Shown here piece by piece: positions 10,377 to 17,249 of a DNA stretch of 64,000 nt. The translations under genes and the position numbers were made by a program. The stretch is from Dimorphilus gyrociliatus (Eukaryota > Animalia > Annelida). The stretch is taken from positions 1,728,916-1,792,915 of the forward strand of contig CAJFCJ010000020.1 in NCBI GenBank assembly GCA_904063045.1, given 5' to 3'. The first letter of the stretch is position 1; each line of letters starts with the position of its first letter. The notes under the pieces were generated by a model that was not told the origin of the DNA, did no database searches, and was given only the letters and a program-made list of their open reading frames with translations.

Positions 10377-11160
10377 TTTCTCTCTCTCTGCTATAAAAAA
10401 AATTAACCGCCATTGTTTATTTTTATATGGAAAACTTTTCTATATTGTTGTTTTATTTACATAGATTAACGGAAATTATTTGAAAAAAATTGCGTAAAGT
10501 ATTAAATTTAATAAAATATATACTTGCTGCTCGACTTTGGTAGATATCCAAGTGAAATCAACTAGTTAAAAAGTCCATATATATAATACAGTCGTCCGAC
10601 ACAAGAAAAGGTCAAGTACCATTTCTTAATAGGAAGGCCTATAGTACTTACATTAGAAAATAAAAATGTATTGCGTTTAAAATATTAATATCCGCCATTT
10701 TTAAAATTTGATAACTATTTAATATAGTTAAATATTTCTTTAGTTCAAAGAAGTTGATTGGTACAGTTTAAAGGTTGTCGCGTTAAATTGCGCGCTTCTA
10801 ACGAATGATCTTTGTAACTTTCATCAGACAATTGATTAAAAATAATGTATACAAAAAGTCAAAACTCTTGAGGTTAAAGATCGAAGCATCACGTGCGTGA
10901 CATTCTCTCTATTACGTAAATTAATAGGATCATCTATTCAGGACACGGTATATTTGATACAGTTTATTTAGTTTATGTACGTGAGAAGATTAAAAATTTT
11001 ATTCCCAAAAGCTAAGGTGTATTGTTGAATGAACCAATAAAAAAAAATGAGAGAAAAGATTGAAAAGTAATGTTCTATTTTCTCATATCGTTTCTTGTTT
11101 GTTATTATTATTTTATTGTTGTGCATGTTTTTCTTTTAAAATGATATTCTTTGTCATAGG

Positions 11161-14107
11161 TTAAGCCACTGTATCTAAACCATGCGTATTGTGTCTTCCA
11201 ATAGTTCCTGTAGATAGGACGACTGCCCCTCTCTTTTTCGGCCTTGACAATGTATCTTGTTTCATGTTTACAAAGGTATTCTAGAGATAAGGTAAAATAT
11301 ATAGGTTAAGAATATAATTTCAATTTTAACCGTACTTACCAAAAACTCATCTGGAGGTCTTTCTAAAGATGGTATAACGTAAACAGAATCAAAGGGAAAA
11401 CATCCTTTAACTTTTGTCTTTTCGTTAATTCCAACACTCCAATGCTCTCTTTGCGAATCTTCATCTACCAGTTGGATAACGTCTCCTTGGCTAAAACTGA
11501 ATTTACTCTGTTTCGTCTCGAGAATAAAATCTTGTAGGCCAACAGCGTATTTAGATCTCCTTCTAAGACCATCCAGAAATGTTGATATAAGTTTCGTAAT
11601 TGTTTGTGAATTTGGTGATATAAATGTCCATTCATCTCCTTTGATTGTAATTAGAGTAAAACTTTGTCCTCTGACCTTTCCAGCTCTACTTGCAAATACT
11701 TCAACGATGTTATAATAATATAGAACTGCTTTGATTTTATATGGTTCGTCCAATATATAAAAACCGTTTGCAGCTACAGCAACAATTACATCATTTTTTG
11801 TCAATTTTGGTCCTCCAATTCTAAATGCCTCGAATAGACCTGCAAATTGTAAAACCCATTTTTTTGGGGCTTCAGTCACAATCTCCTGCTTGAATTGTCC
11901 TGTATCCTTTCCCTCTTGACAGACTTCGTGAAAAGAAGATGTGATAGCCTGAGTCCAACCTTCCTGTGTTCTTCCCCATTTTAGGCAATTCTCTGAAAGG
12001 TACTTTGATAAACTTTTTGACAATTTAGCCTCATCCAATTCACATCCATTGTCTATAAAATAATGAATAGCAGCGTAGCGAGCCAACTCTTCTTCAGATC
12101 TAACTTTATACTCCTCCAATCTTATTCCTTTCATTATTTGTACAAATATTAACTCGGTAGCAATGAGATCGTAGGAAGGATCATGCCAAGGACTAAACAT
12201 TTCTTTTCTGAAAAAGATTTTCCAAGGTGCATCTTCAGTCTTTTGTCCCCTTCCAAAAACGACCTGCTCACATTCAGAAATTGCATCCATAACGTGATCC
12301 ATTCCGCTACCCAGACTTGAGATTTTATCATACACTCGGATAAATATTGAAAATCCAAAGAAATCCTTTAAACCAATTTTATTAGCCAAACGATTGCATA
12401 ACTCGGCTGAAGTGGTAGCTGAATCTCCTTCTATAGATTCCAATCTTCCATCAGCGAATGTAATTGGTAGTACGATGTACTGTCTTGCCAACGATGTTTG
12501 ATATTCCAACCAATTCGGTGGATGATATCTCATACCGTTTGCAGCCGTTCTACTTATTATTTTTCTTGTATATTTGGAATAATCATGATACTCTTTTGGA
12601 GCGTCTCTTAAAAAACATCGAATATATCGAAAGAGACGTCCTGATGGGACAACACATCCAGAAATCAAGGATAATAGTACCCATCCTTTTTTGCAGCTAT
12701 CAGCCTTTTTATTATTTGTCAACTGTTTACAAACTTGACAAAACAATTCATCTCTGTTATATTATTAAGATTACTAATTGGACACTAAATAAATAATGTC
12801 TTAATACAAACCTTATATCTTTTCTTAATATGGCATGTCCAATAATAAAATGCAGTATTTCCATTTCAGTAGCAGGCAGGTTGGCAATAACCCCTGCAGG
12901 TCCGGAGTCGTAAAGGTAGTCGGTCGGTTCATTGTCAAACTACACAGACCAAAACATAGCAGAATGTTTTTGAGATGAATAAATATTGTAGGTAAATTTA
13001 CCTTCTCTCTTAAAAGTTTCTCTTTCTTCTTAGCTTTTTCTTCTCTATCATCCGTATTACTCGATTGTCTTGTGAACTTTTTTAAGAAAGAATTCCTTTT
13101 CTTTAATTTATACGACAAATACTCCTTCTATGTGATAATAAGAGAGATAAAAAAGCAAAATATCAAAATGAGAAAAGATACATACAGATTCTTTATTGTT
13201 GTTAGTTGGGTTTTGTACACTAGCCCTTCTTGATACTTTAATGGCTCTTTCCAAAGACCTATAGACTTTGGTCATTATTGGCACACGATCATTAGTCTAA
13301 ATTCGTAACAGGGTCACTGATTAGAAATAACGATTCTTCAATAATAAGATAACAAGGATCTACATACATTTTTATTAGGTCTTGTTAGAACAACATCGCC
13401 CATAAATTTTTGAATTGCAACAAATATGGCCACAGAAATCTGTAGACGAAAAAAAGAAAAACAGACTGATGGATTAACATCTAAAAAATCTTTATCTCTA
13501 CTTCAAAGAAATGACAGAATTTCACTATTCAAAATATTTCTTAATAATATAAAAACAAAGATTACGTACAGTTTTGTCCAGTTCATGCTTTTTCTCTATT
13601 AGTGGTTGTTTTATGGCATTTTCAGTGAAACTGCCATTATTTGCAGTAGAAAAATTAGTTTTAACATACTATAATAATAAAATAAATATAATTAATCATT
13701 AATTAATTAGTTAATTAACTAATAAGGCAATAGTAACATCTGAAAAATGTAATTTAGCTAGTGTTTCTTCCTTTTCTTGATCAATCTGAAGAAAAATTTC
13801 GGTTATTTCATTCTGTTCTTCTTCTACTAATCCAATGTTAGCTTCAAATTCCGGTGTAAGCCCTTCTTCGCAATCCTAAGCGTGTTGAAGAAAAAGCTTA
13901 AATCGTTTACATTAAGGAAGTAAACTACGTACGACGGAAGATATGCCACAATCAATTCTTAAAGACGGATTTAACTCGCTATTACCCTATAGAGAAATAG
14001 TTTTTTAATTGTAGGTGTAAGATCAAAGAGTCAAAGAAACTGCTAACCCCTTCTCTGTTCAATTCTGGAGGATTGTTCGTACTAGCGCTTCTTCTCTTGG
14101 ACGACAT
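11161..14107 (-). CDS. Motor-less myosin-VII-like protein (MyTH4-FERM-SH3), about 770 aa
   Basis: Ten exons chain in frame from ATG 14107 (MSSKRRSAS) to TAA 11161. Colinear with the first MyTH4-FERM-SH3 unit of myosin VII (KQPL, AIQKFMGD, PIMTKVY, LHFIIGHAILR, RDELFCQ, PPNWLE, SSLGSGMDHVMDAISECEQ, FFRKEMFSPWH, TIKGDEWTF, RSKYAVGLQD). No motor or IQ region found. Confidence 0.85.
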
Positions 14108-14286
14108 TACAGAAAAATTGCAAAAATAGCTTAACAAATTGACAAGGGTGGTGCACAATATTGCCCCATAGAATTTCTTGGCCTATTTTATTGACAGGAA
14201 TATGCCAATAATATTCATTCTTAAAGGCGGTGCTGGTTTCGCTTTTGTTCACAAATAAATATATTTATATATTAGTATATATAGAG

Positions 14287-14320
<34 letters not shown>
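14287..14320. repeat. Compound (TA)n(GA)n microsatellite
   Basis: Direct reading. Confidence 0.9.
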
Positions 14321-14553
14321 AGCAAGATAGTATTCTAATTTTTATTTATATACGTTATACAGTACACCGTTTACCCTTGTACAATCACTTTATAAGCAAA
14401 GAAAGGAATGATGGAAATTGTGAATGAACTTTTTAAAGGAAAAATCTCTTCTCCAAAACTTTTTAATATTCTTTTATTCAATCTTTTCATACAAAATACA
14501 AAAAACTTTCATTTATTAAAAACTCTTGAACAGAGTTTTTTTTTCATCTTTAT

Positions 14554-14572
14554 TCTCTCTCTCTCTCTCTCT
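14554..14572. repeat. (TC)n microsatellite
   Basis: Direct reading. Confidence 0.85.
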
Positions 14573-14900
14573 TTTTTTTAGTGCATTCATATGCTAATGT
14601 GCAAGCACTACAATTTTACTCTTATCGTTTTGAAGCTTTTTTTAGCATATGACGTTCATTTATAAAATATATGTTCAAGTGTATTTTTAAATTGAAATTA
14701 CGATACTATCAGTCTACTTATAAGATACTACTAATCAATTTTTTGTACGATATAGATAAGACTTATTTAAGGTTATATTATTTGTTTTTTAATACGACTT
14801 ATGGTCTTTTGTTTATGAGTAAGAATCACATGTAGACAAAAATTAAGCAATAATTTTATATCTTTAAATATTTTTTTATAATAACATAGTTTATTTCTGT

Positions 14901-14946
14901 AGAGAGAGAGAGAGAGAGAGAAAGAGAAAGAGAAAGAGAGAGAGAG
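14901..14946. repeat. (AG)n / (AGAAAG)n purine tract
   Basis: Direct reading. Confidence 0.9.
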
Positions 14947-15160
14947 CGAGAAATATGAAAATACTTTATATAACTAAATATGAAGGTTACATGCGAATGA
15001 GATGAAGGATGGATGAAAATAAAAGGAGAGAGGGAGAGAAAGATATAGAGGAGTTGTGAGAATTTTCGCCTGTAAACTATTATTAGAGCGCAAAGATAAA
15101 TTACACCAGCGCTAAATCCCATAATACGATATATAGAATCGCCGGCAAGTGTTTTGAGTA

Positions 15161-15170
15161 GTCACGTGAC
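15161..15170. promoter_or_regulatory. Palindromic E-box GTCACGTGAC upstream of the light-chain gene
   Basis: 10-bp perfect palindrome about 180 nt 5' of ATG 15353. Function is inferred. Confidence 0.45.
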
Positions 15171-15352
15171 GATACTCTCCAGTTTGCCTGCACAGTTTAG
15201 TCTGAGGAGTTGGTCCAGCAGACAGACCACTGTCTTTCAACTTAACTTAATCTTCTTTTTCTGTGAGGTATTTTCTCAAATTTTCATTTCTTTTTCTTGC
15301 AATATCTTATATTATTCTATTTTTTCAGACAACAAACTTTTCAACTGCAATA

Positions 15353-16583
15353 ATGGGTGAAGAAAAGGTAAGAAAGCTATTCCTTTTTCTCATATCTTTT
15401 CATTGTTTCACATTTCTTCCATTAGTGTTAGATAAATTTTTTGACTGTACCAGATTAATAAACAAATTCATAATTGTAAAATGTGCGCAAGTTCTGTCAA
15501 GTTATTTTAATAGCAAATAATATTGCTAATCTGTAAAACTGCAATACGTTTATCTTCAATATTTTTGCATAGCATAACCTATTCTGTGGCACTCTAAAAC
15601 TTTGCAGCTGCCAAGCCTGTTGACCTAAATATGTAATTTATATTAAACTGCACATACACCTGCCATAGTTGCGTGTATATTTATAGCATTAGTTCTTTTC
15701 CATTCCCATTTTTTTGTATATGAATATTTTATTAATTTCTAATTTTTGGTTCAATTTTTAAATATTTAACAGAAAGAGAAGAAGAAGAAGAAGAAGGAAA
15801 AGAAAGAAGAATCTGAGATCGAAGAACATTCTGGAGATGAGAAAAAAGAAGCTAAGCCAGCAAAGAGAGGAACATCAAACGTTTTTGCCCTCTTTAATCA
15901 GGCACAGATTCAAGAATTCAAAGAGGTAAAATGCATATGAAAGTGTTTCAAACTTGACAAATGTAAACCTTTTTTCAGGCCTTTACCATGATGGATCAGA
16001 ACAGAGATGGTGTAATCGATATGGACGATCTAAATTCGATTCACCAACAATTGGGTAGAGAGCCAGATACGAAAACGTTGAAGGCCATGCTGGAGGAGAG
16101 TCCTGGTCAATTAAACTTCACTCATTTTCTAACTCTATTTGGTGAACATTTGCACGGTACCGATCCCGAATCAACCTTGAGGGACGCCTTTATCATGTTT
16201 GACGAGGGAAATACTGGAAAATTATCTGAAGAATAGTTAGTATATCATAAAAAAAAGTTATACTTAGAACAGGGCGAAAAATTCCGCCCATAGATAGCGC
16301 TGCATAATAAACAATGTATTGCGGTATATTTATATACCGTTAGATTTATGTTAGCTTAAAAACCCCTGGAGAATTGCAGCTAGGATCTGAATTAGTATAG
16401 TATAATTCTAAACAAACTTTTTCTATTTTGTCAAATAGCTTTAAAGACTTACTCATGAATGTTGGAGATCTGTTCAGCAAGGACGAAATTAAGCAAACCT
16501 TCAAAGAAGCACCAATCGAGGGAGGTCAACTCGATTATTTGGCGTTCGTTCGTCTCATAAAGAGAGGAAACCAAGAAGAGTAG
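15353..16583 (+). CDS. Myosin regulatory light chain with a Lys/Glu-rich N-terminal extension
   Basis: Four exons (first 15353-15367, second from 15773). [39 protein letters not shown] (phospho-site plus EF-hand I), LNFTHFLTLFGE, GTDPE; ends KRGNQEE. Confidence 0.95.
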
Positions 16584-17249
16584 ATTCTTAGTTTACCTAG
16601 TTTTTTTTTCTGCCATAATTTATACCGTTGGTTTGCTTTTTTTCTTCTTTATTTTGTCTTTTTTTTCACAATGAGCAAACTAGAGAGAAAACATTTCTAC
16701 CCAAAAACAAAAGAAAAAACAAAATAAAACCTAATAATTATTATCTGTAAAGAAAACAAAAAGACCCTCTTTTTCGGAAAATAATACAAGATTTGATGAA
16801 AGAAACTCATTGTTCTATCCTTCTTTCTCTATGCATGGTTCAAACCCTTTTCCGAGAAAATTATTCTCTTTTTTATTTATGATTCGGAAAATTGTACGTC
16901 GCTTTAAAATAAAATACGGGCAAGCTGAATATTTGATCATAAACGTTGGCAAGTCTTATTTAATATACCAATGTATGAAATAATTCTAAAACCGCCAAAT
17001 ATGGACATCGTAAAATTTGACGATGCTTTGTTAAGAGAACACTGTTTGATCATGCTTTATCAACATTCGGTTATATTAGGGATATAAAATAGCTCTATCT
17101 AAAGCTACAAAGCTTTACTGTACGTGATTTAAGTGGTGAATCTCAGTTGTAATTTTACTAAAGAGATATTTTCAGTATTTTATTTATATATCTTCCTTCA
17201 AACTGTTACTAAAGTTTATCTGTAACCATTTTATCACTCGGAGTTGAAT

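What the first reader, a model, noticed from the sequence alone, without database searches (positions are those of the whole stretch)
11161..14107. Headless, half-tailed myosin-VII paralog (MyTH4-FERM-SH3 only)
Seen: ten exons join in frame from an ATG at 14107 to a stop at 11161, giving about 770 aa. The protein starts just before the region matching the myosin-VII MyTH4 and ends 39 aa after the SH3. Only about 1.2 kb, largely microsatellite, separates this ATG from the opposite-strand light-chain gene, too little for a motor domain. Known: myosin VII has motor, IQ motifs and two MyTH4-FERM units, and headless isoforms are known for myosin X. Inference: a dedicated motor-less gene could act as a cargo/microtubule/membrane adaptor or dominant-negative regulator of the full motor in microvilli or sensory cells.
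Basis: partly seen in the sequence, partly recalled or inferred. Interest (0 to 1): 0.75.

Follow-up and report, generated by a model that had tools for sequence, protein, structure and literature searches.

The report
Motor-less myosin VII tail gene, annelid-wide
This annelid genome has a separate, expressed and conserved gene that encodes only the first cargo-binding half of the myosin VII tail, with no motor, so it most likely acts as a passive adaptor rather than a transporter.

Summary
The window is from Dimorphilus gyrociliatus, an annelid. On the minus strand, ten GT-AG exons run from the ATG at 14107 to the stop at 11161 and encode 773 aa. A 2,400-nt spliced transcript contig matches all nine introns exactly. 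The protein consists of the myosin VII post-SAH linker, then MyTH4-FERM-SH3, then a 39-aa tail. The closest solved structure is 3PVL (E 4e-139).

No motor domain and no second MyTH4-FERM occur anywhere in the 64 kb. An in-frame stop lies 26 codons upstream of the ATG. The divergent light-chain gene starts less than 0.9 kb away. An independent assembly of a related dinophilid has the same ten exons, the same start and the same neighbours. Non-synonymous divergence is about 0.12 while synonymous sites are saturated.

Orthologues exist in Capitella, Helobdella, Ridgeia, Paralvinella and in several complete transcripts. They share the same headless start region and the same C-terminal tail, which ends [S/T]-x-[A/I]. 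Capitella also has a canonical 2,165-aa myosin VII on another scaffold, and the two genes share six intron positions and phases. This points to an old partial DNA duplication.

I found no description of this family in the literature. Its function as a non-motor adaptor is inferred, not shown. The scan had not noted this family on other DNA.

The parts
14048..14107 (-). Exon 1. ATG at 14107-14105, 20 codons (starts MSSKRRSAS), donor GTTAGC.
   Evidence: The transcript contig covers 14093-14048. The start MSSKRRSAS is conserved in the relative at L005:1577.
14183..14185 (-). In-frame TAG, 26 codons upstream of the ATG, with no ATG between.
   Evidence: The relative has an in-frame TAG 11 codons upstream of its ATG.
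13933..13986 (-). Exon 2, 54 nt, 18 codons. First copy of the short N-terminal motif.
   Evidence: Joints 13985/14047 and 13874/13932. Frame. 82% aa identity in L005.
13738..13875 (-). Exon 3, 46 codons. Second N-terminal motif (EEGLTPEFEANIGL) and the stretch homologous to the pre-MyTH4 'KF.KF' region.
   Evidence: Homology to the N-termini of Helobdella, Paralvinella and the transcript orthologues.
13570..13668 (-). Exon 4, 33 codons. Start of the N-terminal extension of the MyTH4 domain.
   Evidence: Implied by the contig arithmetic.
13368..13439 (-). Exon 5, 24 codons. The public annotation (DgyrCDS12693, 644 aa) starts at the internal Met of this exon.
13186..13296 (-). Exon 6, 37 codons.
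13002..13127 (-). Exon 7, 42 codons. Basic, low-complexity loop of the extended MyTH4.
12812..12939 (-). Exon 8, 128 nt. Start of the Pfam MyTH4 core. It ends in a phase-2 intron at 'LR|DE' that is shared by all headless genes examined.
11340..12753 (-). Exon 9, 1,414 nt. Rest of MyTH4, FERM F1-F3 and SH3.
   Evidence: Pfam. 3PVL E 4e-139. Transcript contig.
11161..11280 (-). Exon 10. 39-aa conserved tail ending T-V-A, then TAA at 11163-11161.
   Evidence: The tail is conserved in Ridgeia, Capitella, Helobdella and the transcript orthologues.
11069..11160 (-). 3' UTR, as far as the transcript contig reaches. AATAAA at 11117-11112.
   Evidence: Sequence read.
14108..14959 (.). Intergenic, bidirectional-promoter region between this gene and the divergent myosin regulatory light-chain gene. 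It holds four short microsatellites and has no RNA contig on 14249-14839.
14960..15262 (+). First (5' UTR) exon of the neighbouring myosin regulatory light-chain gene. It bounds the headless gene upstream.
   Evidence: Contig X2 record 7 and joints 15262/15329 and 15265/15327. 90% identical to L005:1-210.

Best explanation
This is a stand-alone, expressed, protein-coding gene of Dimorphilus gyrociliatus. It encodes a 773-aa motor-less derivative of myosin VII made of four parts:
- the acidic linker that follows the SAH in canonical myosin VII;
- the first (N-terminally extended) MyTH4-FERM;
- the SH3;
- a 39-aa conserved tail that ends in a class-I PDZ-ligand-like [S/T]-x-[A/I]-COOH.

It belongs to a gene family conserved across annelids. 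The family arose by a partial, intron-containing DNA duplication of the myosin VII gene, running from after the SAH to the SH3-MF2 linker. It then evolved several-fold faster than the parent while staying under purifying selection.

These points are shown: the gene structure, the expression, the absence of motor and MF2, the conservation, the paralogy with canonical myosin VII in Capitella, the shared introns, and the fold.

This part is inferred, at about 40%: the protein has no actin-based motor, IQ or SAH region, so it cannot move or bear force. It most likely works as a soluble or cortical adaptor. Its MyTH4-FERM groove would bind one partner and its free, disordered C-terminal PDZ ligand would bind a PDZ scaffold. 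That would assemble, or buffer, a myosin VII-type adhesion or sensory complex without the motor.
For: Gene model and RNA:
- Ten GT-AG exons encode 773 aa.
- A 2,400-nt spliced contig matches them exactly, and a second study shows two of the same joints.

No motor:
- tblastn with myosin VII fragments, including a complete N-terminal half (P0062 1-1037) and MF2-bearing tails, hits only 11337-13017 in the 64-kb window.
- Upstream lie the light-chain (+), TMTC (+) and alanyl-tRNA synthetase (-) genes. Downstream lies a desaturase.
- An in-frame stop lies upstream of the ATG.

Independent assembly:
- The relative's contig L005 has all ten exons, the same start and the same synteny.
- pN is about 0.12 against saturated pS of 0.7-0.8. 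This holds separately in exons 1-8 (exon 6 not scored), exon 9 and exon 10.

Family:
- Members are found in Capitella, Ridgeia, Paralvinella, Helobdella and several transcript-sized contigs. They have the same N-terminal motifs and the same C-tail.
- Transcripts L001 and L007 carry in-frame stops upstream of their ATGs.
- Replicate assemblies give the same 772- and 713-aa ORFs.
- No motor match lies within about 8-15 kb upstream in four annelid genomes.
- The family is a clade with 100/100 and 99/100 support and a long stem of about 0.8.

Paralogy:
- Capitella has a canonical 2,165-aa myosin VII on a different scaffold.
- Six intron positions and phases are shared between that gene and the headless genes.

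Fold:
- 3PVL E 4e-139 and 5F3Y E 9e-109 by sequence.
- AF2 model of orthologue P0007: pLDDT 79.8, folded core about 80-750, disordered termini. Foldseek top hits are 3PVL (target TM 0.81) and 5F3Y (target TM 0.87).

C-termini: all 10 complete family C-termini end [S/T]-x-[A/I].
Against: - The transcript contig starts 14 nt downstream of the ATG. The 5' end and the transcription start are therefore not directly seen, and one run's contigs cannot exclude a rare longer isoform.
- I could not find out whether Dimorphilus itself keeps a canonical myosin VII. It was not among the 120 listed hits. 'Paralogue' is therefore shown in Capitella, not in this genome.
- The placement of the clade relative to canonical myosin VII is unstable. 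It is nested and sister to all bilaterian copies, so the age of the duplication is not fixed.
- No binding partner has been tested.
- Alanine is a weak PDZ C-terminal residue.
- The CEN2-binding pocket residues of canonical MF1 are not conserved, so the partner cannot simply be assumed to be a SANS/ANKS4B-like protein.
Confidence: 0.85

Rival explanations
1. It is the middle part of an ordinary full-length myosin VII gene. The motor exons and the MF2 exons would lie outside the window or be lost in an assembly error, so the 'headless' gene would be an annotation or assembly artefact.
For: The RNA contig does not reach the ATG. Gene models of this family are fragmentary in several genomes.
Against: - No motor or MF2 match anywhere in the 64 kb.
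- At least three unrelated genes fill the 10 kb upstream, in a genome whose introns here are 57-130 nt.
- An in-frame stop lies upstream of the ATG.
- A conserved stop follows a conserved tail in at least eight species or transcripts.
- An independent assembly has the same arrangement.
- Transcripts of orthologues carry stops on both sides of a 713-848-aa ORF.
- Capitella has both genes, on different scaffolds.
Confidence: 0.03
2. It is a decaying partial duplicate, a transcribed pseudogene or a young lineage-specific fragment without function.
For: Partial motor-less duplicates of myosin VII do occur. The scallop protein P0041 differs from the full-length copy by scattered substitutions at otherwise invariant residues. 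The headless clade evolves fast.
Against: - The frame is open over 773 codons.
- pN is about 0.12 with saturated pS between two dinophilids, in every exon scored.
- Orthologues occur in annelid lineages that split hundreds of millions of years ago, by established annelid phylogeny.
- The termini and the intron structure are conserved.
Confidence: 0.02
3. The gene is real, but it works mainly as a natural dominant-negative. It would compete with canonical myosin VII for the MF1 cargo (a SANS/ANKS4B-type CEN peptide) and so uncouple cargo from the motor.
For: The supramodule is the same as in 3PVL and 5F3Y. Canonical myosin VII coexists with it in Capitella. Headless Myo10 is a known precedent for a motor-less MyTH4-FERM product (PMC6345916).
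Against: - A triple mutation of A1128/R1129/K1192 in the MyTH4 pocket abolishes SANS/ANKS4B binding (PMC5493754). These residues are invariant in 13 of 14 canonical sequences.
- In the headless clade they are variable. Dimorphilus has K, K and L at these three positions.
- The family has its own conserved N- and C-terminal motifs, which suggests partners of its own.
- The long stem branch fits a change of function.
Confidence: 0.2

Closest known systems
Myosin VIIa/VIIb N-terminal MyTH4-FERM-SH3 (MF1-SH3; PDB 3PVL, 5F3Y)
   Same: Same domain order and fold. It is 42-45% identical over about 480 aa to canonical myosin VII MF1-SH3 sequences. E is 4e-139 to 3PVL, and the target TM-scores are 0.81-0.87. 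It shares the extended N-terminal MyTH4 helices and six intron positions with canonical annelid myosin VII.
   Different: No motor, IQ, SAH or MF2. It is a separate locus. It ends 39 aa after the SH3 in a family-specific tail. The CEN2-binding pocket residues are not conserved. It evolves several-fold faster than the canonical gene.
Headless myosin X (Hdl-Myo10), the brain isoform of MYO10
   Same: A motor-less product that keeps a MyTH4-FERM cargo module and cannot induce or travel along actin protrusions (PMC6345916).
   Different: Hdl-Myo10 is an alternative-promoter isoform of the motor gene itself and keeps the whole tail. The annelid protein is encoded by its own gene, keeps only half of the tail, and derives from class VII.
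Non-myosin MyTH4-FERM proteins (PLEKHH/MAX-1 family; plant KCBP kinesin-14)
   Same: They use a MyTH4-FERM supramodule outside a myosin (KCBP: PMC4574192; PLEKHH from my own knowledge).
   Different: They have different partner domains (PH domains, a kinesin motor) and no SH3 after the FERM. They are not nested in, or sister to, myosin VII MF1 in sequence.
Recent motor-less myosin VII-like copy in the scallop Argopecten irradians (P0041, 1,316 aa)
   Same: It is also a myosin VII tail without a motor in a lophotrochozoan. It begins after the SAH region.
   Different: It keeps both MF1 and MF2. It is 86% identical to the full-length copy, so it is young, and it lacks the annelid N- and C-terminal motifs. 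Its status (gene, allele or decaying copy) was not examined.

Membership tests
Class VII myosin (as a myosin) | Myosin motor (head) domain | tested here: not met
   No tblastn match to myosin VII motor sequence anywhere in the 64-kb window. None within 8-15 kb upstream of the orthologues in four annelid genomes. No PF00063 in any family member.
Class VII myosin (as a myosin) | IQ motifs and SAH lever extension | tested here: not met
   No PF00612 hit. The N-terminus aligns only with the post-SAH acidic linker of canonical tails.
Class VII myosin (as a myosin) | First MyTH4-FERM followed by SH3 | tested here: met
   Pfam MyTH4, RA_2 and FERM_C1_MyoVII. 3PVL E 4e-139 over residues 108-605 of P0001. 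Fold match. The SH3 Pfam scores are just under threshold.
Class VII myosin (as a myosin) | Second MyTH4-FERM (MF2) | tested here: not met
   A stop follows 39 aa after the SH3 exon. MF2 queries hit only the MF1 locus, weakly. The same stop and tail occur in the orthologues.
MyTH4-FERM supramodule proteins | Contiguous MyTH4 plus three-lobed FERM folding as one unit | tested here: met
   AF2 model of orthologue P0007 has pLDDT mostly above 85 over residues 220-650. Foldseek places it with the myosin VII, Dictyostelium Myo7 and Myo10 MF structures.
Headless isoform of a myosin gene (Hdl-Myo10 type) | Produced from an internal promoter of the motor-bearing gene | tested here: not met
   It is a separate locus. 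In Capitella the headless gene is on KB303545.1 and canonical myosin VII is on KB306898.1. In the window no motor exons exist.
SANS/ANKS4B-binding MF1 (Usher-type tripartite complex) | Basic MyTH4 pocket that binds CEN2 (Myo7b A1128, R1129, K1192) | tested here: not met
   Canonical sequences have A-R...K in 13 of 14. Dimorphilus has K-K...L, and the other headless proteins vary. The functional importance of these residues comes from PMC5493754.
SANS/ANKS4B-binding MF1 (Usher-type tripartite complex) | FERM central groove that binds CEN1 | not tested
   I had no residue list or coordinates to map.
Class-I PDZ ligands | Free C-terminus [S/T]-x-hydrophobic | tested here: met
   The family termini are TVA, TIA (L005 exon 10), SAA, TSA, SAI, SSA, SLI and TFI. 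The tail is disordered in the AF2 model. Actual PDZ binding cannot be tested with these tools.

The most novel reading that the evidence does not exclude
Annelids carry an old, dedicated 'free MF1' protein. It would couple a FERM/MyTH4-bound membrane or adhesion partner to a PDZ scaffold of the harmonin/whirlin type through its C-terminal ligand. In that way it would build, or gate, a myosin VII-like adhesion or mechanosensory complex without any motor. It would be a natural separation of the cargo-scaffolding and force-generating roles of myosin VII.
Probability: 0.25. Interest if true: 0.65.

Novelty: new variant of a known kind. Interest (0 to 1): 0.5.

Why it matters
Surveys of myosin evolution search with the motor domain. 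They therefore miss motor-less descendants. Neither of the two large surveys I read mentions a headless class VII gene.

This family shows that half of the myosin VII tail has been kept as an independent gene, under selection, across annelids and alongside the full motor. That gives a natural experiment for asking what MF1-SH3 does on its own. It is relevant to how Usher-type and brush-border complexes are assembled.

It also corrects several gene models: Dimorphilus DgyrCDS12693, Capitella CAPTEDRAFT_175577 and the Paralvinella model.

This is a moderate result, not a major one. The domains are well known, and no function has been shown.

Tried and rejected
- Motor or MF2 exons elsewhere in the window: none.
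- Assembly break at 14.1-15.1 kb: rejected. An independent contig of a relative spans the same junction, and the stretch has no Ns.
- Retrocopy origin: rejected, because introns are shared with the parent gene.
- Family members outside annelids: three searches found only annelid or unnamed members (word searches; full HMM search of 1.84 billion representatives). Short hits such as P0085, P0095, P0097 and Mercenaria P0059 proved to be fragments of canonical myosin VII. This absence is weak evidence, because the unnamed transcripts could not be assigned to a taxon.
- Dating the duplication by phylogeny: inconclusive. The position is unstable. AU tests reject neither an annelid origin (p 0.13) nor a spiralian origin (p 0.09).
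- Locating a canonical myosin VII in Dimorphilus: not achieved. It was not in the 120 listed rows, and no tool searches this genome as a whole. Earlier scan notes on this genome did not help.
- dN/dS as a ratio: not quotable, because synonymous sites are saturated. Only pN much lower than pS can be stated.
- Pfam on the N-terminal exons: no family.
Full report
**What is in the window**

The window is from the annelid Dimorphilus gyrociliatus. The large open exon at 11268-12746 (minus strand) is 99% identical to the database protein DgyrCDS12693.

Reading the minus strand and checking frames by script gives ten exons:
- 14107-14048
- 13986-13933
- 13875-13738
- 13668-13570
- 13439-13368
- 13296-13186
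- 13127-13002
- 12939-12812
- 12753-11340
- 11280-11161

All introns are GT..AG and 57-130 nt long. The exons sum to 2,322 nt and encode 773 aa.

Pfam finds MyTH4, RA_2 (the FERM F1 lobe) and FERM_C1_MyoVII well above threshold. It finds SH3 models just under threshold.

The annotated protein matches the solved myosin VIIa MyTH4-FERM-SH3 structure 3PVL at E 4e-139 and myosin VIIb 5F3Y at E 9e-109. The second MyTH4-FERM structures score only about 1e-19. The module is therefore specifically MF1-SH3.

**Expression and exon structure**

Two public runs hold the stretch. I laid them on window:10900-16800, which is 5,901 letters and so within the operators' limit.

One run (X2) has a 2,400-nt contig lying on 11069-14093. 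Its piece boundaries (record positions 238, 647, 774/775 and 2188/2189) equal the running sum of the exon lengths above. The contig is therefore the spliced mRNA and confirms all nine introns. This includes the intron in the AT-rich stretch whose row the tool dropped.

A second study (X1), a coral metatranscriptome, shows the joints at 12753/12812 and 13874/13932, with a few base differences. This suggests that a close relative is expressed there.

The contig starts 14 nt inside the ATG, so the 5' end is not seen directly. There is no RNA contig on 14249-14839. From about 14960 the divergent myosin regulatory light-chain gene's 5' exon begins on the plus strand. The gap between the two genes is at most about 850 nt. 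Only about 140 nt of it is microsatellite.

**Is it really headless and half-tailed?**

Five lines of evidence bear on this.

- tblastn with myosin VII fragments hits only 11337-13017 in the whole 64 kb. The queries included a complete N-terminal half (P0062, residues 1-1037) and several MF1-SH3-MF2 tails.
- The ORF survey places other genes all around it. Upstream are the light-chain, TMTC and alanyl-tRNA synthetase genes. Downstream are desaturase, CLN3 and DTW-domain genes.
- An in-frame TAG lies 26 codons upstream of the ATG, with no other ATG between.
- A genomic contig of a related dinophilid (L005, about 80% aa identity) comes from a different data set. It carries all ten exons in order, the same MSSKRRSAS start and an upstream in-frame stop. 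It also has the light-chain 5' exon at its end and the same downstream genes. This rules out an assembly break.
- Between the two species pN is about 0.12, while pS is 0.7-0.8 and therefore saturated. This holds separately for the N-terminal exons, the big exon and the tail exon. Exon 6 was not scored. All parts, including the new start and the new end, are under purifying selection.

**A conserved annelid family**

Word-based searches found short relatives:
- Ridgeia piscesae, 633 aa
- Capitella teleta, 548 aa
- Paralvinella palmiformis, 627 aa
- Helobdella robusta, 771 aa
- Several unnamed transcript-sized contigs encoding 704-848 aa

The complete members share three features:
- a short, variable N-terminus;
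- two copies of a short motif of the type 'LTAEFRHRLGL';
- the pre-MyTH4 region, MF1-SH3, and a tail '...TLPRKRG.VVL...TIGRH..HG..[S/T]-x-[A/I]' that ends the protein.

Window exons 3 and 4 align with these N-termini.

Two of the transcript contigs (L001, L007) have in-frame stops upstream of their ATGs. Replicate assemblies give identical 772-aa and 713-aa ORFs on 2.5-kb contigs.

No motor sequence lies within 8-15 kb upstream of the gene in Ridgeia, Capitella, Paralvinella or Helobdella. In Capitella, unannotated N-terminal exons lie at L003:9195-9538.

A full HMM search of 1.84 billion representatives found only three representatives of this type. Everything else was canonical myosin VII or fragments of it.

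**Origin**

Capitella has a canonical 2,165-aa myosin VII with motor, IQ, MF1, SH3 and MF2 on a different scaffold. Owenia has one as well.

I mapped introns on the gene models. Six intron positions, with the same phases, are shared between the Capitella canonical gene and the headless genes of Capitella, Ridgeia and Helobdella. The last of these, a phase-0 intron just after the SH3, is the Dimorphilus intron at 11281-11339. Two further introns are specific to the headless genes.

The family therefore arose by a partial DNA-level duplication, not by retroposition. Dimorphilus has since lost most of the introns in the MF1 region.

The tail exon is homologous to the canonical exon encoding the SH3-MF2 linker, cut short by a stop (sequences).

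In trees of the MF1-SH3 region the headless proteins form one clade, with 100/100 and 99/100 support. The clade sits on a stem of about 0.8 substitutions per site, and its branches are several-fold longer than canonical ones. Its position differs between data sets. It is nested among bilaterian copies and sister to all of them. The latter is probably a long-branch effect. AU tests do not reject an annelid origin (p 0.13) or a spiralian origin (p 0.09).

The distribution I found includes Dimorphilus and Pleistoannelida. I saw no member from Owenia or from other phyla. This fits an origin early in annelids, but that rests on weak negative evidence.

**How it probably works**

Shown: the protein has the complete MF1-SH3 supramodule. 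The AF2 model of orthologue P0007 has pLDDT 79.8 and pTM 0.77, with a confident core from about residue 80 to 750. Its N-terminal 72 residues and C-terminal 18 residues are disordered. The best structural matches are 3PVL and 5F3Y.

Shown: it has no motor, IQ, SAH or MF2.

From established knowledge (PMC5493754), MF1 of myosin VIIa/b binds the CEN1 and CEN2 peptides of SANS/ANKS4B, and MF2 binds harmonin. Mutating the MyTH4 pocket residues A1128, R1129 and K1192 abolishes CEN binding.

Those residues are invariant in 13 of 14 canonical sequences I aligned. They are variable in the headless clade. Dimorphilus has K, K and L. Simple competition with the motor for the same cargo is therefore less likely than a changed partner.

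All complete family members end in [S/T]-x-[A/I] on a disordered tail. That is the form of a class-I PDZ ligand.

My inference is that this is a non-motor adaptor that bridges a MyTH4-FERM-bound partner and a PDZ scaffold. Because it lacks MF2, it cannot take part in the MF2-dependent autoinhibition described for myosin VII (from my own knowledge). None of this has been tested by binding assays.

**Comparison with known systems, and novelty**

The nearest precedent in function is headless myosin X. That is an isoform of the motor gene and keeps the whole tail (PMC6345916).

Two motor-based surveys of myosin evolution do not mention a headless class VII gene. Text searches for motorless or headless MyTH4-FERM proteins in annelids found nothing.

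I rate it a new variant of a known kind: a gene-encoded, half-tail, motor-less derivative of myosin VII, conserved across annelids.

Following the operators' binding note, I did not hand the joined 773-aa spliced model to any search or folding tool. I used instead:
- the exons by reference;
- the database protein P0001, which covers part of exon 5 and exons 6-10;
- natural full-length orthologues.

Scripts computed exon lengths, phases, per-exon translations and per-exon substitution counts only.

Noticed in passing
window 13368-14107 (-): The public protein model DgyrCDS12693 (P0001, 644 aa) starts at an internal Met in exon 5. The transcript-supported and conserved model adds 129 aa at the N-terminus (exons 1-4 and the first half of exon 5).
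   Followed up: yes
L003:9195-9538 (Capitella teleta KB303545.1): The Capitella model CAPTEDRAFT_175577 (548 aa) lacks N-terminal exons. These match the family's N-terminal motifs just upstream of its annotated start.
   Followed up: partly
L004:1-1662 (-) (Paralvinella palmiformis): Upstream of the Paralvinella headless gene lies a 417-aa gene model on the opposite strand that also carries MyTH4 and RA_2. It did not match my myosin VII queries in the part held. Its identity is unknown.
   Followed up: no
P0041 vs P0238 (Argopecten irradians). Also P0254 (Mya arenaria, 1,413 aa): A 1,316-aa motor-less 'myosin-VIIa-like isoform X2' keeps both MF1 and MF2. It differs from the 2,175-aa copy by substitutions scattered along its length (86% identity), some at otherwise invariant residues. 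It looks like a recent partial duplicate or a divergent allele rather than a splice isoform.
   Followed up: partly
window 15061-15269 (+) and joints 15262/15329, 15265/15327: The light-chain gene's 5' UTR exon is 90% identical between the two dinophilids, against about 70% for the neighbouring coding region. It uses two alternative donors 3 nt apart.
   Followed up: no
run X1 (coral metatranscriptome) on window 11102-16698: A coral metatranscriptome holds spliced transcripts 97-99% identical to this gene and to the light-chain gene. A Dimorphilus-like worm was therefore present in that sample.
   Followed up: no
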